A DNA stretch of 64,000 bases, from IMG/VR virus record IMGVR_UViG_3300027985_000843, positions 186,001 through 250,000 of that record. The stretch is one strand, 5' to 3'. Position numbers and translations under genes: made by a program. Position 1 is the stretch's first letter, and every line of letters begins with the position of its first letter. Shown here piece by piece: positions 15,351 through 46,178 of this stretch. Below the pieces are notes generated by a model. That model ran no database searches. It was not told the origin of the DNA and saw only the letters and a list, made by a program, of their open reading frames with translations.

Positions 15351-15393
15351 GATGTCACTTCTCCTGCCCATGGAGGGCGTATAAAGAGAATCA

Positions 15394-32084: not shown

Positions 32085-32309
32085 ATGACTTGGGATGTCG
32101 TTGTTTCGGTCGTCTTCCTCTTGGCCGTCCTGCTGACCATGGCTCGGTGCTTCTACTCGACCTACAAGCACCACCGACAGGTCGCGGACTGGTCCAGGGG
32201 AATGGATGCCGAAAGAGCGGAAATCGTGAGGCTGTCAAACGAGGGTCGGACGGATGAAGCGATCAAGTTGTGGGAAGCCCACCTCAAGAAACACCCACCC
32301 CTACCCTAG
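32085..32309 (+). CDS. Small membrane protein on the opposite strand
   Basis: N-terminal hydrophobic helix VVVSVVFLLAVLLTMA. CGGTGTA lies exactly 10 nt upstream of ATG 32085. Confidence 0.6.
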   Translation: MTWDVVVSVVFLLAVLLTMARCFYSTYKHHRQVADWSRGMDAERAEIVRLSNEGRTDEAIKLWEAHLKKHPPLP

Positions 32310-32983
32310 GTGCACTCATCTCCGCCCCGACCGGCCCACTGGGGCAACCGTACTTCTCGCAGGATATTGAACCGCTTACCATCCGAGATGGCCGAGAAGA
32401 TCCTGTAGTAGGGCTCGAAGGTTTCGTCTTCCTTGGCCGCTCTCTCCAGCACCTTGGCCGCCTTGAAGAAACGGTGTCTGACGCGACCCTGCGTCAGGTT
32501 GAGTCTGGATGCCACCTCGGACTGGCACGTGGTCTCCCACATGCCAACGAGGATGTCCACGTCGATGTTCCGCGTCTCCTTCGCCTTCATGGGGAAGATC
32601 TTCGGCAGGTCGCGTCGAAGATCTTCCTCGGTCACGTCGGGGATCGACAACAGGAACTTGATCCGTTGGATACCTCGGTCGAGGCGATAGCTCACGGCCG
32701 CCTGCGTGATGCCGAACATCGTGGCGATGTCAGCCTGACGCTTATTGCAGCAGAAATATAGGTGAATGAGGTCCGCTTCCCTTTCGGGAATACGATCCAG
32801 AAGGGGGGCTATGCGTTCCTCGAAGTCGTTGCCGTCTCCGAGGAACTCTTGCATGTCCTCAACAGAGACCTGGCACTCCTCGGCGTCGAGGTAGTCTTCC
32901 TCGTCATCGCATCTGGGATCGTATGACGGGAATCGGCTTGCCAACTCGTTGGGATCGATGGGGATGACGTACCCTGCTGCCAT
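32306..32983 (-). CDS. Tandem sigma70 region-4-like HTH protein
   Basis: LDRIPEREADLIHLYF..QADIATMFGITQAAVSYRLDRG and QSEVASRLNLTQGRVRHRFFKA. No region 2 is visible. Confidence 0.7.
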   Translation of the reverse strand: MAAGYVIPIDPNELASRFPSYDPRCDDEEDYLDAEECQVSVEDMQEFLGDGNDFEERIAPLLDRIPEREADLIHLYFCCNKRQADIATMFGITQAAVSYRLDRGIQRIKFLLSIPDVTEEDLRRDLPKIFPMKAKETRNIDVDILVGMWETTCQSEVASRLNLTQGRVRHRFFKAAKVLERAAKEDETFEPYYRIFSAISDGKRFNILREVRLPQWAGRGGDECT

Positions 32984-33026
32984 AAGAATCTCCGTGGACC
33001 CATCCCCGATCCCTACCGAACCCCTC

Positions 33027-34829
33027 TCACCCGAGAAGGATTCCGAGTAGCGGCGTCGGGTTCGTGTTTATCTCTCGCAGCCGGCTGGCTGCTGTTTCTA
33101 CATCCGGATTTGGGTCTGTCACGGAGACGTCGACGTCCGCGAGGGACATCAGCTCTCGATTTAGTCTGACCTGAGGTTCAGACGTGCGCAACCTTTCATA
33201 CTGTCCTTTGCTTACACCGGTCAAGCCCGACGAGTAGACACCATTGATCGTACCGTGAGCTTGGACCAGGGAGCACAGGACCTTCTTTGGGACACGCGGC
33301 ACCCCAGGCAGGTTGTCGGAACTGTCCCCGTAGAAGGCTCGCAAGTCCAGGAGTGTAGACGGGCCAACCCCAAAGGACTTCTTCACCGAGTCCGGGTCGT
33401 GCACCACATCTTTTCGACTCCCCACCCCTGGCACAAGCATGTAGGTTGTCTCCGTGACTAGAGACAGAAGATCACGATCCGTGGAAAAAATCAAGTTGTG
33501 TTGTTCCTTAAGTGAACCGCGCACGAGTGTCGCCAGGACGTCATCAGCCTCTTCACCCGTGTTTTCGGCCTGCCACACCCCACACAAGGGCAGGATCGAC
33601 CGAAGGTAATCCACCTGCGCAACGAAGCCCTCCGGGACCGGAGGCCGCTGAGCCTTGTACTCCCCGTAGACGGCCTTGCGTCGCCTTGAGCTACCATCCC
33701 ACGCCACATACAGTCGGGCTTCCGGATAACGCTTCTTGAGGGAACCGAGAGACCGGAGAAAGCCAAGGACAACACCTGTCGGTCGACCCTGGTCATCCTT
33801 GAGTTCGGACATGCCCGGAGCATGGAAGCATCGGCGAGCAAGGTTGTTTCCGTCCACCAAGACGTTCTGGATGACTTTCACGTTGTTGTCTTTCTTTCTC
33901 TTGGCGACGCGGTGCGCCAAAACTTCGATTTCCTTCTGTAGGAGGTTGATGCGTTCCAGGACGTCCTCGAACCAATACAGCTCCAAGAGCTTGCTCTCGA
34001 TGTGCTGTGTACGTCGATCGAAGTGCGTGTTGTAGAACGTCTTGACGAACGCCAACCTGGGACTGAACTGCGCGTTCCACTCGTCCAGCCATACGAATTG
34101 ATGGAGCTTGTCTTGAAGGTCGTCGGCACGGGACTTCTGATAGAAGGACCGGACGAAGGCGACTCGCTTGGACAACGAGCCGTCCCACGCAGATATGGAC
34201 TCAAGGTCCGACCACTTCCGACGAAGTTCGTCACCCCGAGACGCGTGCCACCGGAAGACCGGCCGTGCGAGACGTGTCCAGCCCCGCAGGGCCGTAAGTC
34301 GACTGAAGAACCCAGACAACGGAGTCCTCTTGACCACTTGTAGAAAGGGTCGAGGCAGCGTCACGATTGTCTGCTTGCTCCGTAGCTTGACGAACACCTG
34401 GACCATCCCCTGCTCGGGGATGTCCTCGACAACAGTGGCCTCGATGTTCTGGTAGGGGCCCGAACAGATCATCACTCGATCGCCCACTCCAATGCCCTGG
34501 TCGATCTCCTGATGAAGTTGCGACTGCATCCCAAGGATCTCTTCCTGGGAGATCAGAGACAGGCGCCCCTGCCCGTCTCTCAAGGCCGACTGCACGAAAC
34601 GGCTGTCCTCGATCCGTAGGTATGGGGCCGGATTCCCAGTGTACTCCACGAAGATGTAACCCTCGACAAGGTAATGGATGACCTTGTCCTCGCCTACCTG
34701 TGTCACAGCGGCAGGCACGAAAACGTTGGCCTTGGGGTCTTTCAAAGCACTCCGGAGGCCCCTCTTCAGGACCTCAGGGTCTTCCCCCTCGCTTCTGGGA
34801 GACAGCTCGAAAACAACCCAACCTGCCAT
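33027..34829 (-). CDS. NusG-like (NGN+KOW) domain fused to a Pol I-type 5'-3' exonuclease/flap nuclease
   Basis: N-terminus WVVFE..VFVP..LVEGYIFVE..GDRVMICSGPYQNIEATV. C-terminus LVDGNNL..WDG..YKAQR..EADD..STDRD..GDSSDNLPGV. Start moved to ATG 34829 (TGATG overlap with dnaX). Confidence 0.85.
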   Translation of the reverse strand: MAGWVVFELSPRSEGEDPEVLKRGLRSALKDPKANVFVPAAVTQVGEDKVIHYLVEGYIFVEYTGNPAPYLRIEDSRFVQSALRDGQGRLSLISQEEILGMQSQLHQEIDQGIGVGDRVMICSGPYQNIEATVVEDIPEQGMVQVFVKLRSKQTIVTLPRPFLQVVKRTPLSGFFSRLTALRGWTRLARPVFRWHASRGDELRRKWSDLESISAWDGSLSKRVAFVRSFYQKSRADDLQDKLHQFVWLDEWNAQFSPRLAFVKTFYNTHFDRRTQHIESKLLELYWFEDVLERINLLQKEIEVLAHRVAKRKKDNNVKVIQNVLVDGNNLARRCFHAPGMSELKDDQGRPTGVVLGFLRSLGSLKKRYPEARLYVAWDGSSRRRKAVYGEYKAQRPPVPEGFVAQVDYLRSILPLCGVWQAENTGEEADDVLATLVRGSLKEQHNLIFSTDRDLLSLVTETTYMLVPGVGSRKDVVHDPDSVKKSFGVGPSTLLDLRAFYGDSSDNLPGVPRVPKKVLCSLVQAHGTINGVYSSGLTGVSKGQYERLRTSEPQVRLNRELMSLADVDVSVTDPNPDVETAASRLREINTNPTPLLGILLG

Positions 34830-36337
34830 CAGACACCGTTTTGAGGAAAGAAGAACAGCCGGAACTCGCGAGACCACTGTTCAGTGGTCAGAATGTCGCC
34901 CTTGCTCAACCCGTTGGCGCCACGGAATTGGTGCGACCCGTTACTGGAGTTGCCGTTGAACCCTCGTGGCATCTTGTCCGGCCGAGCCTGACGATCGATC
35001 TCCGTGAGGGCACAAGGATCTCCCGACCCAAGATTGCCGATCTTGTCCGCTGGCTTCGAGGGCGGGGGAGCTGCAACTTTGGGTTCGGGAACCTTGGGTT
35101 CGGGCTTCGGTTCTGGGGCGGCCGCCACGGGCGCCTCAGGGGCCGCCACGGGCGCCTCTGCCTCCGGGACGGGCTCATGGGCCTCCGGCGCCTCCGAAGC
35201 TACCTGAGGCCGCTCTGAGGGCGGGGGAGGCGGGCTTACTGGGGCAGAGGTAAGTACAGGAGCCGAGACAACAACAGGCGGAGCCGCAGACTGCGCGGCC
35301 GAGGCCACAGGCAGACCGCTGGAACACCTGACCACGTCGCACACCAGACCGACCTTCGTGGGGCGAGACGACCGCAAGAAGTATTCTGCTAGTCGAACGA
35401 CGTCATCCCCGTAAACGGCGAACACTTGCTTCGCGAGGTCCTTGTCCATGTGACCGGACTCGGAGAAGATGCCGTGAGCCAGGCGATAAGAGTTCATGGC
35501 CGCCTCAGCTAGGCCGACGGTCACATCGTCTACGCCCACACGATCACAGGCTGCCTCTACCATGTCCACCGACTTCGAGGGATCCCCGAGCGAGAGCAAG
35601 ACCTCGTAATACCTCGAAACCAGAGCTAAGTCCAGATATTCCCGCACGGTGGGTAAATCTACCCGGCCAAGTTGGGCAATCATCTCCAGGCGATTGAGGA
35701 CGTCACGAACATGGCCGTCGCTGTAGTCGATGACCGTCATGACGGCATCGTCCTCAAAAGGTATCCCTTCGGCCGTGAGAACTTTCTGCATGCGTTCGAG
35801 AATCGCCTCGCGGGAGATGCGCCGAATCGGGTACTCCTCACACCGCGACCTGATGGTGCCCCGAATCTTCGAAGGCTCAGTAGTACAGAAGATGCCCACG
35901 AGCCGCTTGTCCTCCAGGGGCTTGAGCAGCACGTCCTGCGAGTCCCGGCTCATCCGGTGCATCTCGTCGAACAGATAGATCCGCTTGGGAGCCCCCACGA
36001 CAGAGAACGACAGATCCTCCACGATCTTTCGAACGCTGTCGATGGTGCCCCGGCTCGCGGCGTCTAGCTCATGGAACGCCTCGGCGGTCTCACTCAGGAT
36101 GGCCTGGCAATTGTCGCACTGATTGCAGGGGTCGCCACTGTCCTGGATGTTCTGACACAACAGGGCCCGACCAAGAATGCGTGCGAGAGTCGTCTTCCCC
36201 TGACCGTGACCGCCCGAGAATATGTAGCTTGTGTCCAGGGCAGTGCCCTTGCGAATACGCTCCCGGAGGACCTGGACCGAGCCGTCTTGGCCCAGGACAT
36301 CCCCGAACGTCATGGGTCTGTATTTGACATCCCACAC
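34829..36337 (-). CDS. dnaX: DNA polymerase III gamma/tau-like clamp loader ATPase
   Basis: KYRP..FGDVLGQ, GQGKTT, C..CNQCDNC, ELDAAS, DEMH, TIRSRC, and a Pro/Ala-rich linker. Confidence 0.92.
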   Translation of the reverse strand: MWDVKYRPMTFGDVLGQDGSVQVLRERIRKGTALDTSYIFSGGHGQGKTTLARILGRALLCQNIQDSGDPCNQCDNCQAILSETAEAFHELDAASRGTIDSVRKIVEDLSFSVVGAPKRIYLFDEMHRMSRDSQDVLLKPLEDKRLVGIFCTTEPSKIRGTIRSRCEEYPIRRISREAILERMQKVLTAEGIPFEDDAVMTVIDYSDGHVRDVLNRLEMIAQLGRVDLPTVREYLDLALVSRYYEVLLSLGDPSKSVDMVEAACDRVGVDDVTVGLAEAAMNSYRLAHGIFSESGHMDKDLAKQVFAVYGDDVVRLAEYFLRSSRPTKVGLVCDVVRCSSGLPVASAAQSAAPPVVVSAPVLTSAPVSPPPPPSERPQVASEAPEAHEPVPEAEAPVAAPEAPVAAAPEPKPEPKVPEPKVAAPPPSKPADKIGNLGSGDPCALTEIDRQARPDKMPRGFNGNSSNGSHQFRGANGLSKGDILTTEQWSREFRLFFFPQNGV

Positions 36338-36340
36338 GTG

Positions 36341-36856
36341 TCACTCCTCGTCTTCGCCCTCGCCCTGTGACAGCTCTTCTTCTCCCAGTTCTTCCTGCCC
36401 CTGCCCCTCCTCCGAGAGGATCTGTTCGAGGTCGACTTCCTTGGAGATGGACACGAAGGTGTGTAGGTCGGCGTTCCACGCACCGTAACGGTCCAGGATC
36501 GTACCGAACTCCTGCACATCGGGCTCTCGGATCTTCCAAGAGATCTCGCCGGTGTCTTCGTTCTCCTCGCCGTAGCAACGCTCCAATAAGTGGTCGATGA
36601 GGGCCGTGCGCTGCTGGTCGTCCAGCTCGTTCCACATGTCCGCTGCGACCTCGACCACGAAGTCCTTCCCGATGATCCATTCCAGGAAGCCGCTCAGCTT
36701 GCGCACCTTCCCAAGGATCTTTCTGCCACCCTTCGAGCTGGCTTCGCTCACGAAGCAATACAGCATTCTGGCAGTGGCGATCTCCGGATGGTAGTTGGGG
36801 ATGAGACCCGCAGCGATGTTTTCCAAGCTTTCGGCGTTTTCCCAAGTCTTAGGCAT
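36341..36856 (-). CDS. Phage metallopeptidase-like protein with degenerate HExxH motif
   Basis: DFVVEVAADMWNELDDQQRTALIDHLLERC..EPDVQEF matches the putative phage metallopeptidase pattern, but HLLER replaces HELxH. Confidence 0.6.
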   Translation of the reverse strand: MPKTWENAESLENIAAGLIPNYHPEIATARMLYCFVSEASSKGGRKILGKVRKLSGFLEWIIGKDFVVEVAADMWNELDDQQRTALIDHLLERCYGEENEDTGEISWKIREPDVQEFGTILDRYGAWNADLHTFVSISKEVDLEQILSEEGQGQEELGEEELSQGEGEDEE

Positions 36857-36857
36857 G

Positions 36858-37562
36858 TTACTCTCCTAGCTGTTCTCGGATGAAGTTCTGTAGCTTACGG
36901 TCACCCCAAGCGAGCCATAGTTCGTTGGGGTCTTTCACTCGACCCTTGCCGTCGAGCCTGGGGACTCGCGGGAAGACGACATCGTGTATTCGGTCGAACT
37001 TGTCGTGGTGTTCTCGAATGACACGAGCTGCCGCGTCTCGGCCCTTAGGGTCCATATCGTACGCCAACCACAACTCGTCGACAACCCTGCGAAGGCATCG
37101 AGCTGCCTCACTGGTCAGGTGGTTGGTCAGGGTAGACACAATGTTCGGGCGTGTCCTCTGAATGGGAAAAAGATCGAATGCACCTTCGGTAAGGACCACG
37201 TACTTGGTCTCCCAAGCACTTGCCATGGCCTGACCCAGGCCGAACAGGACGGGTTCCTCATCGTACACGGAGAAGTGCGAATAGCCCTTCTTGTTCACGT
37301 CCACGTGCCGGAGCTGGAACCCCTTGAACTGACACAGCGTGTTGGTCAGGGGCAAGACAAACACGTCCCGAAGCCAACCAGTGCTCTGGTACGTCTCGTA
37401 GAGAATGTCAGCCCCTTCGATGTCGGGCAACCCGTTCGAGATGTACCCGAGGCGGTACAGGCTGATCTGCTCATCGCTCACACCACGAGCCCACAAGGCT
37501 TCCCTCTCCCGGTCCGTCAGTTGACCGTGAGCGTAGTCGACAAGTGCCTCGATCCAACTCAT
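36858..37562 (-). CDS. DnaG-like TOPRIM primase core
   Basis: LFGL..VVLTEGAFD..LAYDMD..KDPNE. No N-terminal CHC2 zinc finger. Confidence 0.8.
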   Translation of the reverse strand: MSWIEALVDYAHGQLTDREREALWARGVSDEQISLYRLGYISNGLPDIEGADILYETYQSTGWLRDVFVLPLTNTLCQFKGFQLRHVDVNKKGYSHFSVYDEEPVLFGLGQAMASAWETKYVVLTEGAFDLFPIQRTRPNIVSTLTNHLTSEAARCLRRVVDELWLAYDMDPKGRDAAARVIREHHDKFDRIHDVVFPRVPRLDGKGRVKDPNELWLAWGDRKLQNFIREQLGE

Positions 37563-38164
37563 CCGACCATCACCAAAGAGCGGTCGGCCTTTCGAATCAG
37601 GACAGCCACGTGGTCATACGAACGAACGTAGGCCCCCACCGAGTCAGACGCCAGCAGGGACTTCCCCTCTGGAAGGTCGGATGCCAGGATCAGAAGTCCG
37701 TCGGAAGTACGGGAGACGTAGCCCTGCATCATCATCAGCCGTTCTGCTTGTTCGACGGGCATGGCTTCTCCGCAGGCTTCCTCAAGAGTTGACGGTGGGA
37801 CTACCAGGGCCCTCGGTGTTTCTCCAAGAGACCGCATGACGTCCTGGGCTTCGGTCAGATCCTTACACCGGTTGGACCAGCCCTCCCTCTCAGAAACCTC
37901 CGACAGGACACGAAACAGTTCCACCATGAGCGGACCTTCTTTCCCAGGAGGGCAGAAGGTCGGAGCGAACCGAACGATGCCGTCGCGGGATAGCCTCGTC
38001 TGAAGAAACGTGCCCCGCATGTTGCTCGACAGAAAGGGCGCATTGCAAAGCTCGTCCGAATACTCCATGAGGACGGGCACAGCGAAGCCTGCCCCCCTTG
38101 ACTGATCTGCCCTTCGGCGGATGCGATCAGTTTTCAGCAGGATCTCAAGAGCTGACGTCCTCAT
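37559..38164 (-). CDS. Hypothetical protein resembling the C-terminal half of the major capsid protein
   Basis: By-eye alignment to 12484..13365 (see findings). Start moved to MRTSAL. Confidence 0.5.
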   Translation of the reverse strand: MRTSALEILLKTDRIRRRADQSRGAGFAVPVLMEYSDELCNAPFLSSNMRGTFLQTRLSRDGIVRFAPTFCPPGKEGPLMVELFRVLSEVSEREGWSNRCKDLTEAQDVMRSLGETPRALVVPPSTLEEACGEAMPVEQAERLMMMQGYVSRTSDGLLILASDLPEGKSLLASDSVGAYVRSYDHVAVLIRKADRSLVMVG

Positions 38165-38768
38165 TCTTCGACCTCCGAATCTGGACCAGTCTGCCGTCCC
38201 CATCCTGCATCTCCAGCAAAGCGGGAGCGTCCGGGCCCGGTGGCAAGAGGTCGAAGTCGGTGACCGCCTGAATCGGAACGATCTGAATGCGCAACACCCA
38301 CCGGTACCACAGAGCTTTCCACCACGGCACGAGGGCGGGGAGGGACGGAGACTCGTCGAGGACCCACAGAAGTTCCCGAACTGCCGGCATGTTGCTAGCC
38401 ACCCAGGCCGGATCGGCTACATCCCTCAGGAATTCGTTCCACAGAGTCCGCTTCGATCGGGTGGGCTGGAAGTAGGGACACTTCATGGCATCGACGTCGT
38501 CCTCGCAGATGGCGCCTTTCCACTGCTCGATGTCTTCGGCACCCAGCATGCACAGACCGATCGTTTGATCCACGGGCTCACCGTTTACGGCGATCCGATT
38601 GTACTGGTCGTTCGTCTCGCCGTAGACTTCCTTGCGACTATCCAGCGGCTGCAACCAGTTGTGAGCACACAAGTGCGGCCGTCGCTGCTGTGCCTCGTGA
38701 ATGCGACGGTCCAACTCCTCACACAGAAGCTGCCGGATTCTGGACTTGATCTCTCCACGGTCGACCAT
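38145..38768 (-). CDS. Cys-containing hypothetical protein
   Basis: Start moved to MVDRGE (TGATG overlap). Contains CAHN..CML..C..CPYF. Confidence 0.55.
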   Translation of the reverse strand: MVDRGEIKSRIRQLLCEELDRRIHEAQQRRPHLCAHNWLQPLDSRKEVYGETNDQYNRIAVNGEPVDQTIGLCMLGAEDIEQWKGAICEDDVDAMKCPYFQPTRSKRTLWNEFLRDVADPAWVASNMPAVRELLWVLDESPSLPALVPWWKALWYRWVLRIQIVPIQAVTDFDLLPPGPDAPALLEMQDGDGRLVQIRRSKNEDVSS

Positions 38769-39442
38769 CAGAGCCTCTTCACCTTCAGGTGCTCCAGGCC
38801 GTCTTCCTCGACACAGGAGCACCGGTATGCCTGGTCTGCGTGTTCCGCAAAGGCCGGCTTGTGGGTCACGAGTACAACGTCCAGCCCCATCTTGGAGGAC
38901 AGCTCTCGTAGTAGTTGGCTCGTCGCCAGCACGTATTCGTCGGAGATAGCCAACAGAGTCTCATCCAGCAACAAGATGGGGTACCGCTTCAACCGAATGA
39001 TGGTCAGCAAGCGGATGACAAGGGAGGCCATGCTCGAAGGGCCGCCGCCAAAGGATTCCAGCGGCTTGCCCCGGTGTGATAGAGGGTCATCCTTCTTCTT
39101 GCTTCGGATGAAAAAGTCGATCGACACCTTGCCGTACTTCTGACTCACGTCCGCTTCGAACAGCAGATCCTGGTCATCGAAAATCGTCTGAAAGCTCTCT
39201 GAAACCAGGTCCTCCACAGAACGCACCTGATTGACAAGGAGCGCATCCATCAGGACTTGGTACAACTCCCCGACCTTCGACAACACGTCGATCTCGGTCG
39301 AAAGGTCTGCAACCTCTCGTTGCTTGGACTCCCTCTCGGATTGGAGACGATCTCGGAGCGTGGTCAGCCGGACTCCCTTGGCCGCCACGCTCCGGACACG
39401 CTGCCTCAACCCATCGAGGGAGCGTACCTCGTCACTCGACAC
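38768..39442 (-). CDS. SbcC/Rad50-like ATPase, C-terminal half
   Basis: Signature-like ESFGGG, Walker B ILLLDE and H-loop LVTH, after a short coiled coil. Confidence 0.85.
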   Translation of the reverse strand: MSSDEVRSLDGLRQRVRSVAAKGVRLTTLRDRLQSERESKQREVADLSTEIDVLSKVGELYQVLMDALLVNQVRSVEDLVSESFQTIFDDQDLLFEADVSQKYGKVSIDFFIRSKKKDDPLSHRGKPLESFGGGPSSMASLVIRLLTIIRLKRYPILLLDETLLAISDEYVLATSQLLRELSSKMGLDVVLVTHKPAFAEHADQAYRCSCVEEDGLEHLKVKRL

Positions 39443-40644
39443 AGGAATACCCCTTCCTTGTTGTCGTCGTCGGGAATGACGACCTTGCCATCTCGATTGA
39501 GGTGGTATTCCTCGACCGTGCGGAGAAGCGTCATCTCGCTGCGATTTGCCGTCGCCGGAATCACAGCCACTCGGAGGATGACAGCATTCCCTCGAACGGG
39601 TTCGATCAAGCCGCGAAGGTGCTCCGTGCCAATACTGGCTGCGAAGTCCTTGTCGCTGGCGTCTCCGCCGAAGTCATCGGTGTCTGAAACGACAGGATTG
39701 GCGCCGACAGGAGCAGATGTGACAGGCCCCGCCCGGCCGACAGCGTGTAGCTGCAACATCTTGTGCTCGGCGTCGTACTTGATTCGGATCTTGTCGGACC
39801 CGCTGGAACTGACGTGCTTGAAGGCACGTACCAAGGTCACCTTCGGAATCGCCAGCACGTAGCCGTCATTCTTGAGGGCGTAATACTTGAACTTCTTGTG
39901 CTCCTCGACCGTGCTGGACCAGCCTACAGCCGACCCGTTCGGAGCCACGATAAATCGAATGGGGCCCATGTGGACGGTGACGTCCTCGTTCCCGCACTTC
40001 GAAAGGAAGGATGTCACGAGACCGACATCCTTCGTGCTGATTGCGAAGGCTCGGCCGCACAGACCCTCGCTGAAGTAGTAGCAAGATCGGATGTTGTCCG
40101 CCCCGAACATCGTCCCGTCGCCGCCCTTCAGGGTCGAGTCGAAGAGCTGCAACGTCTTGTACACCTCGGGCACAGTGTCCTTCTTGGCGACGTGGGCGTT
40201 GACGCAGGCCAGGGCATCCTTGAGGATTGCCGGCGGAACCTTGTAGGTATCCTCGGAGATCTCGTCATCCACGGTCTTCATCAGACGAGGATCGAACGAG
40301 GACACGTTGGCGTTGGCGCCGCCCTCCGTCTCGTACTTGATCCAGAACCGATCTTCCTTCTCGTCATGACCGTATTCGATGTCGATCCAGCCGTCCAGGA
40401 ACTTGAGCCCTTCGGCGGCAAGCGACGGGTAGATGAACGAGCCGTCACCCTCCGACTCGATGACAGGGACATTGACTCTCACGCGGTGCGTGTCGTCTCT
40501 GCCATGGATAGAGCACACCCCGTCCTTGACCACGAACAGGTACCCCGTGCTGTTTTCCTTCTGGGGTGTCGCGGCCGACGGAGACACGATGCTGCTGACG
40601 CTGAGCGCCTCATTGAGGGCTTCTGTGCTGACCCGGATCTTCAT
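39406..40644 (-). CDS. dnaN: Probable DNA polymerase III beta sliding clamp (divergent)
   Basis: MKIRVSTEALNEAL start, alternating alpha/beta pattern and 412 aa length. DnaX, HolA and HolB are present in the same module. Confidence 0.6.
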   Translation of the reverse strand: MKIRVSTEALNEALSVSSIVSPSAATPQKENSTGYLFVVKDGVCSIHGRDDTHRVRVNVPVIESEGDGSFIYPSLAAEGLKFLDGWIDIEYGHDEKEDRFWIKYETEGGANANVSSFDPRLMKTVDDEISEDTYKVPPAILKDALACVNAHVAKKDTVPEVYKTLQLFDSTLKGGDGTMFGADNIRSCYYFSEGLCGRAFAISTKDVGLVTSFLSKCGNEDVTVHMGPIRFIVAPNGSAVGWSSTVEEHKKFKYYALKNDGYVLAIPKVTLVRAFKHVSSSGSDKIRIKYDAEHKMLQLHAVGRAGPVTSAPVGANPVVSDTDDFGGDASDKDFAASIGTEHLRGLIEPVRGNAVILRVAVIPATANRSEMTLLRTVEEYHLNRDGKVVIPDDDNKEGVFLCRVTRYAPSMG

Positions 40645-40922
40645 TTTTCCTCCTTGTCGAACTCTTCCAAAGCGCCCTCGACCTCTTGCAGATCTTGCTC
40701 GAACGAAGTGAGGAGAGTCTCCAGCTCCGCATGGGCCTGGTCTCTCTGCTCCTTGAGCCGACGAGGGTCGAAGCCGGCGTCTTCGATCTCCTTGCCGATG
40801 TCGGAAAGTTCCTGCATGCGAGCTTCGAGCTGGCCTCTGAGCTTGTCCCTCTTACGAGTGACGCTTGCGTGTCGGGTGAGAGCATTCTCTACCCGTTGTT
40901 TCAGTTGAGCGACTGTTGCCAT
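40641..40922 (-). CDS. Coiled-coil protein (93 aa)
   Basis: Continuous heptad pattern. CGGTGTA lies 10 nt upstream of the ATG. Confidence 0.7.
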   Translation of the reverse strand: MATVAQLKQRVENALTRHASVTRKRDKLRGQLEARMQELSDIGKEIEDAGFDPRRLKEQRDQAHAELETLLTSFEQDLQEVEGALEEFDKEEK

Positions 40923-40932
40923 CCTTCTCTCC

Positions 40933-40939
40933 TACACCG
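40933..40939 (-). promoter_or_regulatory. CGGTGTA element 10 nt before ATG 40922
   Basis: Recurring motif. An SD-like AGGAG is also present here. Confidence 0.55.
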
Positions 40940-41854
40940 CTACGACCGCTTCTTGGCTATCTTTTGGACGACCGACGCTCCCCAGGTACACCGGGAAGGG
41001 GTCGCGAACTCGCAGAATCGACAGTTGTCCTCATTCGCCTTGGGTTTGAACAGCCCTTTGGCGAGAGCCATCTTGTCGGTCTCGTCCAAGTCCGGAATCC
41101 TTGCCGACAGCTCTTCGATCGAGTCCAGGGCCGCGAGGACGTCCTCCAGCAACTGGTCCGTGTCGGCCTGCGAGAACTCCACCCAGTCGATACTACGAGG
41201 GGGAGTGAATCGCCAGTACAGAAACCCCAGCTTGTCGGGCAGCCGGCCATGCTGCAACTGGTACAGCATCCCGTACCAGTAGAGCTGCCGGGGGTCCACG
41301 TACTTGCCACCCCACTTCGAGCCCTTGCCGTCAAGGATGATCAGGTCCTTGTGGGGGGCAATTCGACGGATGATGAAGTCCGCCCGCCCCGCGATCTTGT
41401 GGCCCTTGACGACCTGGTCCAGCTTGACCTCTGCACGGGCGTACGGGCCGAGGAATCGACCGAACTTGATGCTGTCAATCCCACGAGCGATGGACTTTCG
41501 AACGTCATCGATCAGCTCTTCCTTGTCCGCGTACATCCCGCGAGGGTTCTGGCCCTTGCCTTCACCCTTCCACTTGATGATGCCGCATTTGCCGTCCCAT
41601 GACGGGGACGTCTGATCTCTGATGACCTTGTCCACCGTGGGGCGGACCTTCCGCAGGAGCTTGTCCCTCACAGACGCGGGATCTCGCCACAACTCCTCGT
41701 TGTAGAACTCCTCGAAGATGATCCCGATGACCGAACCGTACAGGGACCCGCCCTTGTCCTCAGGCTCGTCCATCTCCGTCTTGTTGATGTACTTGTGCCA
41801 GAACGCGTAAGCACACGAGCTGAACAGCTTGAATCCGGAATACGAGATGTACAT
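40940..41854 (-). CDS. PD-(D/E)XK nuclease, Cas4/AddB-like with four Cys
   Basis: SYS..SSCAY, GRADF, ILDGKGS, QLYWY and CRFCEF..C. Confidence 0.85.
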   Translation of the reverse strand: MYISYSGFKLFSSCAYAFWHKYINKTEMDEPEDKGGSLYGSVIGIIFEEFYNEELWRDPASVRDKLLRKVRPTVDKVIRDQTSPSWDGKCGIIKWKGEGKGQNPRGMYADKEELIDDVRKSIARGIDSIKFGRFLGPYARAEVKLDQVVKGHKIAGRADFIIRRIAPHKDLIILDGKGSKWGGKYVDPRQLYWYGMLYQLQHGRLPDKLGFLYWRFTPPRSIDWVEFSQADTDQLLEDVLAALDSIEELSARIPDLDETDKMALAKGLFKPKANEDNCRFCEFATPSRCTWGASVVQKIAKKRS

Positions 41855-42835
41855 CTACTTTGCCTCCCTCGCCCTCTCCAGGTAGCTTAGGGCGCGGTCC
41901 CGAACTTCCGGGGCGAAGCCCAGCCCCCGAATGGTCGTGGTCACGTCACCATCGGAAGACGCACCGACCTCTTTCTGGAGACGCTCTACGAACTGCGAGA
42001 TGATCGCACCCTCTTGCTCGCGTCTCTGTTTCCGGACTACGTCGAAGACCTCTTCGGCCGGCGGGACACGAAGGGGAATGGTCCCCACAGTCAGGGTCCC
42101 GTCGTCCACCTCAATAAGGGCCACCTGAGGAATCCGAGTCATGTTCTCGTTGTTCAGGGATCCTCGCGACACAGCCCCGGGGTTGACGAAGTACCGACCA
42201 TCGATCCGAACTATCCCCTGGTCCTTGTGCCAGTGGCCGAAACAGCAGACGTCGGGGCCGCCCTCGTAAACGAGGTCCTTGTAGGCGAACACCTCTTCCC
42301 CATAGAAGTCTCGCGTCTCTTCCTGGGGCGGGGGGTTCTCCGAGGCTAGGGCGTGGATGATGAAGATGAGAACATCCTCGTCCCCACGTTCGACAGCCTT
42401 GAAGTCATCGAGGGTCCGAACGAGGCTGTAGGGAAAGCCCACCACCCGGACCTTCATGCCGCCGTCCTCGAAGGTGGTGTCGGTCATACGTTGAATTACA
42501 CCGGCGGCGAACAACACTTGCAGAGGCTGTCGTTCAAGAGTGTCGAGGTTGTTGTAGGCGATGTCGTGGTTGCCGATGTTCAGGTAGACAGGACACGGGT
42601 ACGCGGCGTGGATCTCCGCCGCCCTTGCCACCAGGTAGTGACTGTTGCGGGTGGGCGCCTTGATGTGAAAGAAGTCCCCGCCGTCGAGAATCGCCTTCGC
42701 GCCGTACTTCCGGGCCAAGCTGCCGATCTGTTCCAAGCTGGCCCACACCTCCGACGGATAGTCCGCCTTCCAGGAGTCCGGGTTCTTGTCGGTGGCGTGG
42801 ACGTCCGTTCGGAAGATGAAAGCCAGGTGACCCAT
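41855..42835 (-). CDS. SbcD/Mre11-like metallophosphoesterase nuclease
   Basis: TDVH, GGDFFH, IGNHD and FGHWH motifs. Start moved to MGHLAF. Confidence 0.9.
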   Translation of the reverse strand: MGHLAFIFRTDVHATDKNPDSWKADYPSEVWASLEQIGSLARKYGAKAILDGGDFFHIKAPTRNSHYLVARAAEIHAAYPCPVYLNIGNHDIAYNNLDTLERQPLQVLFAAGVIQRMTDTTFEDGGMKVRVVGFPYSLVRTLDDFKAVERGDEDVLIFIIHALASENPPPQEETRDFYGEEVFAYKDLVYEGGPDVCCFGHWHKDQGIVRIDGRYFVNPGAVSRGSLNNENMTRIPQVALIEVDDGTLTVGTIPLRVPPAEEVFDVVRKQRREQEGAIISQFVERLQKEVGASSDGDVTTTIRGLGFAPEVRDRALSYLERAREAK

Positions 42836-44079
42836 TACTCTTCTCCCAGGTGCAAGCAGTGATCTGCCGTGATGTCTTGCGAGCAGGTCGGGCACATGCC
42901 CATCGCCCGAAACTCGTCGAGGACCGCCTTCTCCTGTTCGACTGTCTCCTGAAGCTCCGCGTCCAGCCTGGCTTGTTCCTCTTGGAGATGAGTTCGACGC
43001 GTCCAGAGCGAGTCCAGATGCTCGTAACGCCCACGCGCCTCCTCGACAGATGTCTTGTCAGGCACAGGCTTCGCCTGGGCGGCCTTGATGCGGGACATGC
43101 TATCCTTGAAGGTCCGCAGACGCTGAATCCACCCCTCGGCCGCCTTGGCCTTCGCGTATGCCGCCCGTAGAGGGTCGGAGTCCAGCTCCCGCACCGACTT
43201 GATGCCTCGGAGCTTTCGAATCTCCGGGGCCAAGGCACGGACACGCTGCAACAGGTCGTCCGCCTTAGCTGCCCGTACGTGCATCGCACGGACATCTGAG
43301 GTGTCCGGTACCGAGGGCTTCGTAGCGGCCTTCAGAGACTGGATAGAGAGCAGGACACGGCTCAAGGTCTTCCGGTACCTGTCCAGCCTCAAGACGCGTT
43401 CCTGGGCCGTCTCTATCGCTTCGTAGCGAGCTTCGATGTCGGACCCTCGACTCACCACGCCATCGAGGCCGGCGTACCGCTCCAAGTCCTTGTCGAGGCT
43501 GCTGATGTCCTTCTCTCGAATCTTCCGTGTGCTGGCCGCCGCCTTGCGGTCCTTCGAAGCTAGAGACACGGCCTTATTGATTTCGTCGAGGTTCGCGACG
43601 TCACTCAGAACATCAGCGATCGTGGTGCCACCCTGGTTCAGGAGAAAGATGGGCTCGAACTGTTCAGCCACCTGAATCAGATCTCGGTGGTCCCCGATCT
43701 TGACCGGCTCGAACAACGGCAAGAGAAAGTCAGGCGCCCCCCGATTCACGGCACTGTAGACGTCAGGATTCTCGGCCCCGTCCTTCCAAACCGTGTATTG
43801 GTTGACAGCGTCACCCTTCTCCCACAGCACACGCATGGCGGGAAAGTGAATGTCGACGGACGCGAAGCACTTGCACTTCTTTTTGCCCTGAGTGCGGCGA
43901 GGGCAGTCCGAAGCGTGACGAACGAAGTCGGTGCCGGAGGCCCCCGTCAGACAACATCGAAGTGCCCGCACGATGGCGCTCTTGCCGACGTTTGATCGCC
44001 CAACAAGTGCCGCGAATCCGTCGACCTTCAGCTTCGTCCGCTTGATCGACTGGAAGTTCTGGATCTCGAACTCAATCAT
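42835..44079 (-). CDS. SbcC/Rad50-like ATPase, N-terminal half ending in a zinc hook
   Basis: IQNFQSI, Walker A GRSNVGKS, QVAEQ (Q-loop) and a coiled coil ending in CPTC. Start moved to MIEFEI. Confidence 0.88.
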   Translation of the reverse strand: MIEFEIQNFQSIKRTKLKVDGFAALVGRSNVGKSAIVRALRCCLTGASGTDFVRHASDCPRRTQGKKKCKCFASVDIHFPAMRVLWEKGDAVNQYTVWKDGAENPDVYSAVNRGAPDFLLPLFEPVKIGDHRDLIQVAEQFEPIFLLNQGGTTIADVLSDVANLDEINKAVSLASKDRKAAASTRKIREKDISSLDKDLERYAGLDGVVSRGSDIEARYEAIETAQERVLRLDRYRKTLSRVLLSIQSLKAATKPSVPDTSDVRAMHVRAAKADDLLQRVRALAPEIRKLRGIKSVRELDSDPLRAAYAKAKAAEGWIQRLRTFKDSMSRIKAAQAKPVPDKTSVEEARGRYEHLDSLWTRRTHLQEEQARLDAELQETVEQEKAVLDEFRAMGMCPTCSQDITADHCLHLGEE

Positions 44080-45487
44080 CGCTGGGTTCGGCGGGAGCCT
44101 CTTCGCCACCGTCGCTCTCAGAGTCGCCGCCGCTCTCGGGGTCATCACCTTCGTCGGTGCCCTCTTCATCCTCGAAGCCGTCGGGGAGATCGATGGTCAT
44201 CTCCTCGGGGTCGACCTCCTCCTCATCGACCATGTTCGAATAGTCCTCCGAGTCTTCCTCTTCGCCGAACTCCTTGCGAGCCATGACGTCAAGGCTGTCC
44301 CCGTCCTCTTCTTCGTCCATGGGAACCTCACGGACTTCCGCGTCTAGGGCCTTGAGGACATCGTCCTTGATCTTCTGGAAGACAATCGGATTGCCCTTGA
44401 GCCACTGACGAAACGCCTCTCGCCCCCGCACCTCCGTGTCACCGTAGGAGTGGAAGCCGCCCGATCGCTTTTTGACAATCTTGGCCGACACGGCAGCGGC
44501 GATCACTGAGTAGAACTCGTCGATTCCGTAGCCGTACCGAATGAACAGCTCAGCCTCCTGGCCTTGACGCGAATCCATCTTGTTCTTGATGATCTTCGCG
44601 ACGGTGTGCGTGCCGAAGGGGATCTTCTTTCTCTTGCCTGTGAGGGGGTCGATCCTCTCGATGGACTCGACCGTCTTCTTGTACAGGTTGATGCGGACCG
44701 AGGCGTAGTATTTCAGGGCCTTGCCGCCGGCCGTATTGCTGCCGCCCTTGCCGCCGCCGATGGAACTACGCTCCTGGTTGATGCAGATCAGAGCCGTGCC
44801 CTTCGCGTTCCGCTTCTTGGCGTTCGGGTCATGCATCCACGAGTTGACGAGCCGCTTGAGCAAGGTGGAGAGACGCTTGGCCTGGATCCCCACGATGTCC
44901 TCATCGTCGATGTCTCGCTCCAGCTCCTTCTTCGGAGTCATGGCGGCCACGGAATCGACCACGATGAGATCAATGCCGCCCATGATGCCGAAGAACATCA
45001 TTTTGAAGCCCTCCTCAAGGGTTCGAGGACCGTAAAGCAGGAGCTTGGACGGGCTGAAGTCGACACCGATCGACTTCGCGTACTTGTGATCGATCGCCTG
45101 TTCGAAGTCCAAGAACATGGCGGTACCGCCTTGCTTCTGGACCTCGGCCACAGCTTGGAGTGCCGTAGTGGTCTTGCCCGACCCAGCAGCCCCAAAGATC
45201 TCAGTGACCCTACGTCTGGGGTAACCAGGGCACACCCTTCCCTTACCGTCGAGAGTGAGGGAGCCGCCGATGGTATGGTCGATGAAGATGTTGCCCGAAG
45301 GCACGCAGGGCGTCGGAGTGTTGTAGGACGCCTTGATAGGCTTTTCGCCGGTATCCTTGAGGATGGATGCCTGGATGACCGCCATCAGTCCCACGGGCTT
45401 GTCTCCCTTGGCAGACTTCTTCGTGGCTTTCTTGGCAGGTGCTTTTGCGGCCGCCTTCTTTGAAGGGGCCTTCTTGGTATCAGCCAT
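44072..45487 (-). CDS. recA: RecA-family recombinase
   Basis: VTEIFGAAGSGKTT, FLDFEQAID, VVDSVA, INQER and GGKALKYYASVR. Confidence 0.95.
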   Translation of the reverse strand: MADTKKAPSKKAAAKAPAKKATKKSAKGDKPVGLMAVIQASILKDTGEKPIKASYNTPTPCVPSGNIFIDHTIGGSLTLDGKGRVCPGYPRRRVTEIFGAAGSGKTTTALQAVAEVQKQGGTAMFLDFEQAIDHKYAKSIGVDFSPSKLLLYGPRTLEEGFKMMFFGIMGGIDLIVVDSVAAMTPKKELERDIDDEDIVGIQAKRLSTLLKRLVNSWMHDPNAKKRNAKGTALICINQERSSIGGGKGGSNTAGGKALKYYASVRINLYKKTVESIERIDPLTGKRKKIPFGTHTVAKIIKNKMDSRQGQEAELFIRYGYGIDEFYSVIAAAVSAKIVKKRSGGFHSYGDTEVRGREAFRQWLKGNPIVFQKIKDDVLKALDAEVREVPMDEEEDGDSLDVMARKEFGEEEDSEDYSNMVDEEEVDPEEMTIDLPDGFEDEEGTDEGDDPESGGDSESDGGEEAPAEPSDD

Positions 45488-45494
45488 ATGGACC

Positions 45495-46178
45495 TCACTC
45501 AGGACGTTCGAAGTGAACGCCCGTCAGGACATCATTCGAACCGAGGATTGAGAACCGGAAGAACCGGTCATCCTCCTTGAACAAGAGGCCCCTGTGCTCT
45601 TCGGTGCCTGCACGAGGCCCCTGCTTGAACACATGGATGCGGTGGAAGGTGATCACCTCAGAAGGTGTCAGCTCTTCCCGTTCGAGAAGCCCTTGCTGAT
45701 ACTCCCAAAAACGAGCAGCGGATCGGGCAATCAAGTACGCATCAGCCTCGTTGTGATTCCAGCGCTTGATCTTGGTCTCTGCCCGGGCCGCCCCAATCAT
45801 GTCCCGCTTGTCCATCGTTCCTTGACGAACACTGGGATCCATCTTGGCGAGCCGCTTGACGGTCATGGGGTCGAAGAACACCACGTCCTTCCTACGGGAG
45901 AACAGTGCCTCGACCACGTAAAGAAACAAGCCGTACAAGCCCTCGCTCCACAACTCCCCGAAGGGGGGCGACTCCACGCCGACACTTTCGATCTCCGGGT
46001 ACGCGTCCACGAGCTGCTGAACAGACTCTCTCAGGAACATGTACCGCCAGACGAACACGCGACTTGCAGGCGTCATCCACACACCTTTGGCGATGACCCG
46101 AGCCGGACCTACAACATCCGACCGGTGCACGCACCAGCCGAAGCCGGTCAGGCTCGGATCAAGACCTAGGGTGATCAC
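45495..46178 (-). CDS. RuvC-like Holliday junction resolvase
   Basis: LGLDPSLTGFGW, VGVESP, DKRDM and NEADA. Confidence 0.85.
   Translation of the reverse strand: MITLGLDPSLTGFGWCVHRSDVVGPARVIAKGVWMTPASRVFVWRYMFLRESVQQLVDAYPEIESVGVESPPFGELWSEGLYGLFLYVVEALFSRRKDVVFFDPMTVKRLAKMDPSVRQGTMDKRDMIGAARAETKIKRWNHNEADAYLIARSAARFWEYQQGLLEREELTPSEVITFHRIHVFKQGPRAGTEEHRGLLFKEDDRFFRFSILGSNDVLTGVHFERPE

What the first reader, a model, noticed from the sequence alone, without database searches (positions are those of the whole stretch)
37559..38164. Truncated major-capsid paralogue inside the replication module
Seen by eye: VELFRVLSEVSEREGW aligns with ERVFAVLDSIAVSGF of the MCP. DLTEAQDVMRSLGETPRALVV aligns with VLADAFAEVERHDLRVARIYM. 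ERLMMMQGYVSRTSDGLLILASDLPEGKSLL..GAYVR aligns with ATLLKTGLQATLWGAQIITSRLVPAGYVYI..GRFPVR. This would be an axial-domain-centred fragment lacking the N-arm and E-loop, encoded about 24 kb from the head genes, between primase and SbcC. Inference: it could be a decoy for capsid-sensing host defences, an assembly modulator, or a repurposed fold.
Basis: inference. Interest (0 to 1): 0.6.

Follow-up and report, generated by a model that had tools for sequence, protein, structure and literature searches.

The report
Mini capsid-fold protein beside phage primase
A conserved 201-residue gene in the DNA-replication operon of a giant phage folds like a stripped-down phage capsid protein, so the shell-building fold seems to have been reused away from the head genes, for a job not yet known.

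Summary
The ORF at 37559..38164 (minus strand, 201 aa) has no Pfam, PHROG or PDB sequence match. Its pairwise similarity to the window's major capsid protein (MCP, 12484..13365) is at chance level (z -0.65).

An exhaustive profile search found 196 relatives (clusters at 50% identity), most of them 165-215 aa. With 146 of them, AlphaFold2 gives pLDDT 97.3 and pTM 0.92. Every top structural match in four libraries is an HK97-fold capsid protein or encapsulin. The best are Z 11.5 to M. xanthus EncA and Z 11.3 to HK97 Prohead II, with about 150 of 201 residues aligned at about 3.4 Å.

It is not a broken fragment. It is a compact P-domain plus A-domain core without the N-arm, kept at about 200 aa. 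In six independent loci and in the window it lies directly upstream of a short DnaG-type primase that lacks a zinc-binding domain. It sits inside a conserved replication-recombination block.

Function is inferred only. My best guess is an exapted capsid fold acting off the virion as an oligomeric partner of the replisome. Decoy, minor capsid and mini-shell roles remain open.

The parts
37559..38164 (-). Gene for the 201-aa compact HK97-fold protein (the finding). The stop codon is included.
   Evidence: ORF list. Homologues begin at the same Met, one with an extra N-terminal residue. 196 relatives, most 165-215 aa. AF2 pLDDT 97.3. HK97-fold matches up to Z 11.5.
38172..38176 (-). GGAGG Shine-Dalgarno-like motif 7 nt upstream of the ATG at 38164. 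It lies inside the end of the upstream gene.
   Evidence: Read directly from the sequence.
37883..37936 (-). Codons for residues 77-94, the long helix in the position of the HK97 P-domain spine helix.
   Evidence: Secondary structure of the high-confidence model. Peptide position.
37628..37864 (-). Codons for residues 101-179.
   Evidence: hhalign.
37559..37562 (-). ATGA overlap. The primase start codon (37562..37560) overlaps the stop codon of the HK97-fold gene (37561..37559). This arrangement is typical of translational coupling.
   Evidence: Sequence. The same butt-joined or overlapping arrangement is seen in six other loci.
36858..37562 (-). Short DnaG-type primase (234 aa, Toprim_2). No zinc-binding domain was detected. 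It is always the next gene downstream.
   Evidence: Pfam Toprim_2 6.6e-9 and phrog_47 5.4e-20. The family is 222-250 aa throughout.
38145..38768 (-). Upstream neighbour of 207 aa, function unknown, with four conserved cysteines. Its end overlaps the start of the HK97-fold gene by 20 nt.
   Evidence: Alignment of five orthologues. No Pfam or PHROG hit. Only viral hypothetical clusters in the Atlas.
12484..13365 (-). The phage's true major capsid protein (293 aa), used as the comparator.
   Evidence: Pfam Phage_capsid 2.3e-5 and phrog_2522 3.1e-53. It is the only PF05065 match in the 371.7-kb record.
32306..46178 (-). Conserved replication-recombination block that carries the gene. In the direction of transcription it reads: RuvC-like, RecA/UvsX, SbcC N-half, SbcD, PD-(D/E)XK, 93-aa protein, sliding clamp, SbcC C-half, 207-aa Cys protein, HK97-fold protein, primase, PhageMetallopep, clamp loader, KOW + 5'-3' exonuclease, sigma region 4 protein.
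   Evidence: Pfam and PHROG scans. Same order in L002 and L004.

Best explanation
The ORF is a real, conserved gene. It encodes the smallest full HK97-fold core that I met in these searches: a P domain with a spine helix plus an A domain, no N-arm, and only short hairpins where the E-loop would be. It is a very divergent relative, probably an ancient duplicate, of tailed-phage capsid proteins. It is no longer part of the head module.

It is a fixed, single-copy member of the replication-recombination operon of a lineage of giant phages related to Bacillus phage G. Its stop codon overlaps the start codon of a primase that lacks a zinc-binding domain.

My preferred mechanism is inferred, not shown. 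The capsid fold has been exapted. The protein works inside the infected cell rather than in the virion, using the fold's built-in tendency to form pentamer- or hexamer-like rings. It would serve as an oligomeric platform or partner for the primase and neighbouring replisome proteins. This is analogous to the truncated 'A-domain encapsulins', which sit in operons with enzymes and are thought to bind them.

The fold assignment carries about 0.95 confidence. The off-virion, replisome-linked role carries about 0.45, and that is the figure given below.
For: Fold:
- AF2 on 146 family members gives pLDDT 97.3 and pTM 0.92, and all five models agree.
- An all-against-all structural search of 48,161 PDB representatives returns only HK97-fold capsid proteins and encapsulins in the top 50. 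The top Z is 10.4, with rmsd 3.4 Å over 146 residues and model range 2-201. Thirty-five chains reach Z >= 8.
- The second look gives Z 11.5 to EncA and 11.3 to HK97 Prohead II.
- Foldseek probability is 0.99-1.0 to capsids.
- In BFVD the best matches are the MCPs of phages Motura and G, with TM 0.60 and 0.59.
- In the ESM Atlas all nine rows shown are phage capsid-type clusters, TM 0.57-0.65.
- Even the poor 6-sequence model gave 49 capsid-fold hits in its top 50.

A real family rather than a remnant: 196 clusters with conserved length, and a single copy in the 371.7-kb record.

Context:
- The 15-gene order is the same in L002 (68% identical target) and L004 (37%).
- The primase begins at or over the end of the gene in 6 of 6 distinct loci and in the window.
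- No excess of promoter-like or terminator-like sites breaks the block.

Rate: between the window and L002 the target is 68% identical, like its replication neighbours (61-80%). The MCP of the same two phages is 94% identical.

Against: - No experiment or computation here shows oligomerisation, binding to primase or absence from virions.
- The whole block is syntenic in every locus seen. Adjacency to primase is therefore not independent evidence of a specific partnership.
- All loci come from one phage lineage.
- Structural genes are often scattered in giant phages, so position alone does not exclude a virion role.
- The protein is near neutral (pI 5.6, family median 6.5) and has no obvious nucleic-acid-binding patch.
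- The family's conserved residues (R181, G177, E76, P30) have no known catalytic meaning.
- Phage G and Tunturi_5, the cultured relatives by MCP, show no detectable homologue. Phage G has no such gene upstream of its primase. The gene is therefore not essential to all phages of this kind.
Confidence: 0.45

Rival explanations
1. It is a minor capsid component or head-assembly factor. Examples would be a vertex or special-site subunit, or a protein that caps or modulates MCP capsomers. It would simply be encoded away from the head genes.
For: It has the fold that builds capsids. It shows weak sequence similarity to this phage's own MCP family. The model resembles HK97 prohead forms (Z 11.3 and 10.9) somewhat better than mature heads (Z 9.3-9.4). 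T4 gp24 shows that capsid paralogues can fill vertices (established knowledge; 1yue is among the hits).
Against: It lies 24 kb from the MCP inside a tightly packed replication operon. It lacks the N-arm that ties subunits together in HK97-type lattices. It diverges much faster than the MCP with which it would have to fit, 68% against 94% in the same pair of phages. In LR745208.1 the MCP is 83% identical, yet the positional equivalent is barely recognisable.
Confidence: 0.2
2. It forms a small encapsulin-like shell or facet inside the infected cell. This would enclose or concentrate replication or repair enzymes, as a phage-encoded nanocompartment.
For: The best solved match is an encapsulin shell protein (EncA, Z 11.5, 151 residues). 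The protein is as compact as, or more compact than, encapsulins. It sits in an operon with enzymes, as encapsulins do (PMC8346489).
Against: There is no Pfam encapsulin signature in any of 146 members. The N-terminal helix of classical encapsulins is missing, since alignment begins at EncA residue 29. Cargo-targeting peptides were not looked for. The Z scores for encapsulins and phage capsids are effectively tied.
Confidence: 0.15
3. It is a decoy or inhibitor for host defences that sense capsid proteins. It would be made early, with the replication genes, to occupy the sensor before the real MCP appears.
For: Capsid proteins are direct triggers of some bacterial immune systems (CapRel; bioRxiv 10.1101/2022.05.30.493996, listed). 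The protein has the capsid fold and sits in a non-late-looking operon. It is among the faster-evolving genes of the block, at 37% identity in L004 against 32-59% for its neighbours.
Against: Its divergence is within the range of its neighbours and not an outlier. It shares only about 13% identity with the window's own MCP over the aligned part, so mimicry of a sensed surface is doubtful. A mimic would be as likely to trigger as to block a sensor. It is a stable core gene with fixed synteny, unlike typical anti-defence cargo. No defence-related neighbour was seen.
Confidence: 0.1
4. The resemblance is convergent or an artefact of structure prediction, and the protein is unrelated to capsid proteins.
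For: Pairwise sequence similarity is at chance level. There is no Pfam, PHROG or PDB sequence hit. The hhalign probability is only 29-41%. Everything rests on a predicted model.
Against: Two independent alignments, of 6 and 146 sequences, both led to capsid-fold hits. Five models agree at pLDDT 97. Two different aligners and four libraries give only HK97-fold proteins across the whole chain. The profile alignment falls in the structurally equivalent region and beats all controls.
Confidence: 0.04

Closest known systems
HK97-fold major capsid proteins of tailed phages (for example HK97 gp5; Bacillus phage G gp27, the nearest cultured relative of this window's MCP)
   Same: The P-domain spine helix, P-domain sheet and A-domain alpha/beta core are the same. 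About 142-160 of the 201 residues superpose at 3-4 Å (Z 9-11). There is a weak profile similarity to the A-domain region of the window's own MCP.
   Different: It is about 80-90 residues shorter than the mature or near-minimal capsid chains it matches. It has no N-arm and no delta or scaffold domain, and only short hairpins in place of the long E-loop. It has no Pfam capsid signature. It is encoded in the replication operon next to the primase rather than with portal, protease and scaffold genes. It evolves far faster than the real MCP.
Classical encapsulin shell proteins (Family 1, for example Myxococcus xanthus EncA)
   Same: This is the best solved structural match (Z 11.5, rmsd 3.4 Å, 151 residues). 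It is a compact HK97 fold used outside a virion and encoded beside enzymes.
   Different: The target lacks the encapsulin N-terminal helix. It has no PF04454 match. It is phage-encoded rather than cellular, and its neighbours are replisome proteins. No shell formation is shown.
Family 4 'A-domain encapsulins' (DUF1884 / PF08967, for example P. furiosus PF0899, PDB 2PK8)
   Same: It is a cut-down HK97 fold kept in a conserved operon with an enzyme, with a proposed role as a structural partner of that enzyme (PMC8346489).
   Different: Family 4 proteins are about 100 aa and consist of the A domain only. This protein is 201 aa and keeps the P domain and spine helix. There is no PF08967 hit. The gene lies upstream of the enzyme, not downstream. 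It is viral, not archaeal.
T4 gp24 vertex protein (capsid paralogue with a specialised place in the shell)
   Same: It is a second HK97-fold protein in a phage that already has an MCP. 1YUE and 6UZC are among the structural hits.
   Different: By established knowledge, gp24 is MCP-sized, clearly similar in sequence to gp23 and encoded beside it in the head module. None of that holds here.

Membership tests
HK97-fold capsid-protein superfamily (Pfam clan CL0373, Phage-coat) | Three-dimensional fold: a P domain with a long spine helix and sheet, plus an A domain alpha/beta core, in the canonical order | tested here: met
   On a predicted model (pLDDT 97.3). Z reaches 10.4-11.5, about 150 residues align, and the whole chain is spanned. 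All top hits in PDB, BFVD and the ESM Atlas are capsid proteins or encapsulins.
HK97-fold capsid-protein superfamily (Pfam clan CL0373, Phage-coat) | Sequence-profile match to a member family (PF05065, PF25209, PF04454, PF08967 and others) | tested here: inconclusive
   None of the 146 members has a match to a capsid or encapsulin Pfam family at E <= 0.1, and there is no PHROG hit. hhalign to the window's own PF05065/PF25209 MCP family gives P 2.8e-4 and probability 41%, above all controls.
HK97-fold capsid-protein superfamily (Pfam clan CL0373, Phage-coat) | An N-arm and a long E-loop that interlock neighbouring subunits | tested here: not met
   Structural alignments begin at HK97 gp5 residue 128-132 and EncA residue 28-30, which is after the N-arm or N-helix. 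Before the spine helix the model has only short strands (11-14, 33-36, 44-47, 53-56, 63-66). A short E-loop-like hairpin may remain. Residue-level mapping was not available.
HK97-fold capsid-protein superfamily (Pfam clan CL0373, Phage-coat) | Self-assembly into pentamers or hexamers and closed shells | not tested
This needs expression followed by SEC-MALS or electron microscopy.
Major capsid protein of this phage (virion shell subunit) | Encoded in the head-morphogenesis module, and the sole or dominant PF05065-type gene | tested here: not met
   The MCP is at 12484..13365. The target lies 24 kb away between a 207-aa Cys protein and the primase.
Encapsulin Families 1-3 | PF04454 or PF05065-type shell protein next to a cargo enzyme with a targeting peptide; N-terminal helix present | tested here: not met
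   No Pfam hit. The N-helix is absent by alignment range. The neighbours are replisome proteins. Targeting peptides were not examined.
Encapsulin Family 4 (A-domain encapsulins, DUF1884) | About 100 aa, A domain only, PF08967 | tested here: not met
   The target is 201 aa with a spine helix and P-domain strands. No PF08967 hit.
Encapsulin Family 4 (A-domain encapsulins, DUF1884) | Conserved small operon with one enzyme | tested here: inconclusive
   The gene is always directly upstream of the primase, often with overlapping stop and start codons. The whole 15-gene block is syntenic, however, and the gene order (shell protein first) is the reverse of the archaeal operons.

The most novel reading that the evidence does not exclude
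A capsid-building fold has been recruited as a working part of a giant phage's DNA-replication machinery. For instance, it could be a ring- or capsomer-like hub that organises a zinc-finger-less primase and its neighbours, or a minimal shell around them. That would be the first HK97-fold protein with a role that is neither capsid nor encapsulin. It would also define the smallest self-standing P+A core of the fold.
Probability: 0.3. Interest if true: 0.85.

Novelty: new variant of a known kind. Interest (0 to 1): 0.66.

Why it matters
The HK97 fold is known almost only as a shell builder, in tailed-phage and herpesvirus capsids, gene transfer agents and encapsulins. This is a conserved family of about 200 aa that keeps the P and A domains, drops the N-arm and sits in a replication operon. 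It offers three things.

First, it gives a natural minimal version of the fold for studying what is needed for folding as against lattice formation.

Second, it is a possible case of a capsid protein being exapted by the virus itself for an intracellular task.

Third, it is a concrete, cheap experiment: express one small protein, alone and with its primase neighbour.

The case also shows that deep family alignments plus structure prediction can recover capsid homology that Pfam, PHROGs and PDB sequence searches all miss. This matters for the annotation of giant-phage 'dark matter'.

Tried and rejected
- **Sequence family and pairwise searches.** BLASTP and Smith-Waterman between the target and the MCP gave nothing above chance. 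Pfam and PHROGs on the target gave no hit, and Pfam on all 146 members gave no capsid-family hit. PDB sequence searches with both profiles gave only noise. tblastn against 50,697 phage records gave no match.
- **ESM Atlas.** The feature and structure look-up of the single sequence used the Atlas's own model, which is poor (pLDDT 0.34). Its hits (RegA-like cluster, GntR and others) were weak and mutually inconsistent, so I dropped them.
- **The search for related loci.** The 146-sequence alignment failed because it has no conserved 7-10-residue stretch. The 6-sequence alignment found only one extra viral contig, L008. Its profile scores and ORF lengths are identical to those of L002, so I treated it as the same phage.
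- **Complex prediction of primase + target.** The verdict was 'no answer' (ipSAE 0.00 in both runs, controls not run).
- **Profile search in relatives.** A profile search for the family in LR745208.1, Tunturi_5 and phage G found nothing. Inspection of the primase locus of LR745208.1 found a 180-aa positional equivalent with only a 9.8-bit match to the N-terminal motif. Phage G has no gene in that position.
- **Expression.** The only sequencing runs that hold the stretch are DNA runs, probably the source samples, labelled hydrothermal vent metagenome. There were no RNA runs.
- **Promoter and terminator scan of the block.** Counts equalled the shuffle expectation.
- **Literature.** Five full-text searches found no description of a second, small HK97-fold protein in a phage replication module. 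This is a limited library, not proof of novelty.
Full report
**1. What is at the coordinates**

On the minus strand there is an ORF with ATG at 38164 and TGA at 37561..37559, giving 201 aa. An upstream in-frame ATG at 38203 would give 214 aa. All full-length homologues begin at the Met of the 201-aa reading, one of them with an extra N-terminal residue. A GGAGG lies 7 nt before that ATG.

The window is bases 186001-250000 of a 371,739-bp IMG/VR virus record estimated at 78% complete. It is therefore a giant phage. Only DNA runs labelled hydrothermal vent metagenome hold the stretch. Virtually all genes of the window are on the minus strand.

The true major capsid protein (MCP) is at 12484..13365, minus strand, 293 aa. 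It matches Pfam Phage_capsid at 2.3e-5 and phrog_2522 'major head protein' at 3.1e-53. It is the only PF05065 match in the record.

**2.

The quoted peptides are present. As a pairwise comparison the answer is no. BLASTP gives E 0.7 on unrelated scraps. The best local score is 29, against 32 +/- 5 for 1000 shuffles.

The target has no Pfam, PHROG or PDB-sequence match and no tblastn match in 50,697 phage records.

Because the protein was left open, I ran the exhaustive profile search. It found 196 representative proteins (clusters at 50% identity) at E <= 1e-3, and 91 at E <= 1e-30. Most of the 150 listed are 165-215 aa. I aligned 146 of them (A2). No member hits a capsid or encapsulin Pfam family; the eight matches, each in a single member at E 0.02-0.1, are unrelated.

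Profile against profile, the picture changes.
- A2 against 18 MCP relatives aligns target 103-179 with MCP 168-248, P 5.7e-4.
- I then built a more diverse MCP profile by adding LR745208.1, Tunturi_5, phage G and four actinophage MCPs. With it the alignment is 101-179 against 166-248, score 33.5, P 2.8e-4, probability 41%.
- The controls were a reversed profile (11.1), 40 column-shuffled profiles (maximum 17.8, mean 12.9) and an unrelated primase profile against the MCP profile (13.7).

The signal is weak but real.

**3. Structure**

With only six sequences, AlphaFold2 gave a mediocre model (pLDDT 62). Even so, 49 of the top 50 hits of an all-against-all search of 48,161 PDB representatives were HK97-fold capsid proteins or encapsulins. 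The fiftieth was 2PK8, the A-domain-only DUF1884 protein.

With the 146-sequence alignment the model is excellent: pLDDT 97.3, pTM 0.92, all five models at 97.1 or better. Its elements are:
- short N-terminal helix 5-9;
- strands 11-14, 33-36, 44-47, 53-56 and 63-66;
- a long helix 77-94;
- helices 103-112, 124-131 and 137-147, interleaved with strands 117-122 and 158-161;
- a C-terminal sheet of strands 169-173, 177-182, 185-190 and 197-200.

Results with this model:

| Library and method | Result |
|---|---|
| PDB, Foldseek | 15 hits at E < 1e-3; all hits listed are HK97-fold; probability 0.99-1.0 for the best |
| 48,161 PDB representatives, wide structural search | top 50 all capsid or encapsulin; Z 10.4 (8eco_A, rmsd 3.4 Å, 146 residues, model 2-201); 35 chains at Z >= 8 |
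| PDB, second look at Foldseek's matches | Z 11.5 to M. xanthus EncA (151 residues); 11.3 to HK97 Prohead II (chain 130-380); 437 chains at Z >= 5 |
| BFVD (viral models) | MCP of Achromobacter phage Motura (E 1.7e-6, TM 0.60) and Bacillus phage G gp27 (E 2.8e-6, TM 0.59) lead |
| ESM Atlas | all nine rows shown are phage capsid-type clusters; TM 0.57-0.65; 146-160 residues at about 3 Å |

The alignments span the whole chain. On the capsid side they begin just after the N-arm, at HK97 gp5 residue about 129, or just after the encapsulin N-helix, at EncA residue about 29.

So the protein is a compact complete core (P + A domains) without an N-arm and with at most a short E-loop-like hairpin. It is not an 'A-domain-centred fragment'. 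I could not obtain residue-level superpositions, so the fate of the E-loop is stated only from the secondary structure.

**4. Context**

Pfam and PHROG scans give this block in the direction of transcription:
1. RuvC-like resolvase
2. RecA/UvsX
3. SbcC N-terminal half (444 aa)
4. SbcD (Metallophos)
5. PD-(D/E)XK nuclease
6. a 93-aa protein
7. sliding clamp (412 aa, phrog_947)
8. SbcC C-terminal half (224 aa)
9. a 207-aa protein with four conserved cysteines
10. the HK97-fold protein
11. Toprim primase (234 aa, no zinc-binding domain detected)
12. PhageMetallopep
13. clamp loader
14. KOW + 5'-3' exonuclease
15. sigma region 4 protein

Genes are butt-joined or overlapping. The 207-aa gene overlaps the target start by 20 nt. 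The target's TGA overlaps the primase ATG as ATGA. Promoter-like and terminator-like sites are no more frequent than in shuffles.

The same order is found around homologues that are 68% identical (L002, a 282.8-kb contig) and 37% identical (L004, a 185.7-kb contig). It is also seen on short contigs (L003, L005, L006, L007). In all six distinct loci the primase begins at, or a few bases from, the end of the homologous region.

The gene is single-copy in its genome.

**5. Lineage and rates**

The MCP belongs to a very large, extremely conserved family: 2065 clusters, with the best 120 at 84-96% identity, on contigs up to 620 kb. Among deposited phages its nearest relatives are an uncultured 485-kb phage (LR745208.1, 83%), Tunturiibacter phage Tunturi_5 (49%) and Bacillus phage G (39%).

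Between the window and the L002 phage the MCP is 94% identical. The HK97-fold protein is 68% identical, within the 61-80% range of its replication neighbours.

In LR745208.1 the primase locus has the same layout, with a 180-aa gene in the target's place. That gene keeps only a weak match to the family's N-terminal motif (9.8 bits). Phage G and Tunturi_5 gave no match, and phage G has no gene in that position.

The protein thus evolves like, or faster than, replication accessory proteins. It does not evolve like a lattice partner of the near-frozen MCP.

**6. Mechanism**

*Shown:* a conserved gene; a confident predicted HK97-fold core lacking the N-arm; a weak sequence link to the window's own MCP family; fixed placement and probable translational coupling with a short primase inside a replication-recombination operon.

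*Inferred:* the fold was duplicated or acquired from a capsid gene and exapted for an intracellular task. I favour an oligomeric, capsomer-like platform or partner for the primase and replisome (about 0.45).

My reasons are the operon context, the evolutionary rate, the loss of the lattice-locking N-arm and the precedent of A-domain encapsulins paired with enzymes (PMC8346489).

The rivals are a minor capsid or assembly protein (0.2), a small encapsulin-like shell (0.15), a decoy for capsid-sensing defence (0.1) and a prediction artefact (0.04).

The one complex prediction allowed (primase + target) returned 'no answer' and counts for nothing either way.

**7. Known or new**

The fold is known. 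The family has no Pfam or PHROG model. Five full-text searches found no description of a small second HK97-fold protein in a phage replication module. The phage G multi-omics paper mentions only the MCP as HK97-like.

I class it as a new variant of a known kind: a minimal HK97 core in a non-morphogenetic operon. Interest is moderate to high because the function is open and the decisive experiments are simple.

**Housekeeping**

No alternative genetic code was used. Read laying was not used because no RNA run holds the locus.

Noticed in passing
window 42835..44169 (-) and 38768..39442 (-): The SbcC/Rad50-like ATPase appears to be split into two genes. The N-terminal half is 444 aa (phrog_16465, phrog_77). 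The C-terminal half is 224 aa (SMC_N, phrog_15167). Between them lie SbcD, a PD-(D/E)XK nuclease, a 93-aa coiled-coil-like protein and the sliding clamp. The same split is seen in L002 and L004.
   Followed up: partly
window 38145..38768 (-): A 207-aa protein of unknown function lies directly upstream of the HK97-fold gene. It has four cysteines conserved in all full-length orthologues aligned, in motifs resembling C-x-H-N, G-L-C-M, I-C-E/D and R-C-P-Y-F. This may be a metal site. Given that the primase lacks a zinc-binding domain, it might supply that function. It has no family or fold assignment.
   Followed up: partly
window 36858..37562 (-): The DnaG-type primase is only 234 aa, consisting of Toprim plus the preceding subdomain. 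It has no zinc-finger domain and only two cysteines. Its whole family (242 clusters) is 222-250 aa.
   Followed up: partly
window 12484..13365 (-): The 293-aa MCP is extraordinarily conserved. The best 120 of its 2065 clusters are 84-96% identical, on contigs up to 620 kb. The replication genes of the same phages are only 61-80% identical.
   Followed up: partly
L004 6001..6738 and L005 74..790: In two distant relatives the HK97-fold ORF runs about 57 codons past the end of the homologous region. It overlaps the start of the primase gene in another frame, giving 238-245-aa gene calls. This could be a lost stop codon, a real extension or an assembly error.
   Followed up: no
L014 2214..2756 (-) (LR745208.1): A 180-aa gene sits between the Cys-protein homologue and the primase. 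It occupies the place of the HK97-fold gene but keeps only a weak N-terminal motif match (9.8 bits). It is probably a very divergent member.
   Followed up: partly
window 33027..34877 (-): A 616-aa protein joins a KOW motif, weak here and called NusG (weak) for the L004 orthologue, to a 5'-3' exonuclease (FEN) domain. This is an unusual fusion, and it is conserved in L002 and L004.
   Followed up: no
window 14115..15371 (-): A 418-aa protein lies two genes upstream of the MCP in the direction of transcription. It has long Gln-rich and Asp/Lys repeat stretches (a repeated D-D-K-G-type unit). It looks like a scaffold or a low-complexity head protein.
   Followed up: no
model m8a7fab4fe4b9 (window 37559..38164): The model superposes better on HK97 prohead forms (Prohead II Z 11.3, Prohead I Z 10.9) than on mature heads (Z 9.3-9.4). 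This hints at an unexpanded-type conformation.
   Followed up: no
window 36341..36856 (-): A PhageMetallopep (PF18894) protein with an acidic tail lies immediately after the primase. It is conserved in all larger loci. Its role in a replication operon is unexplained.
   Followed up: no
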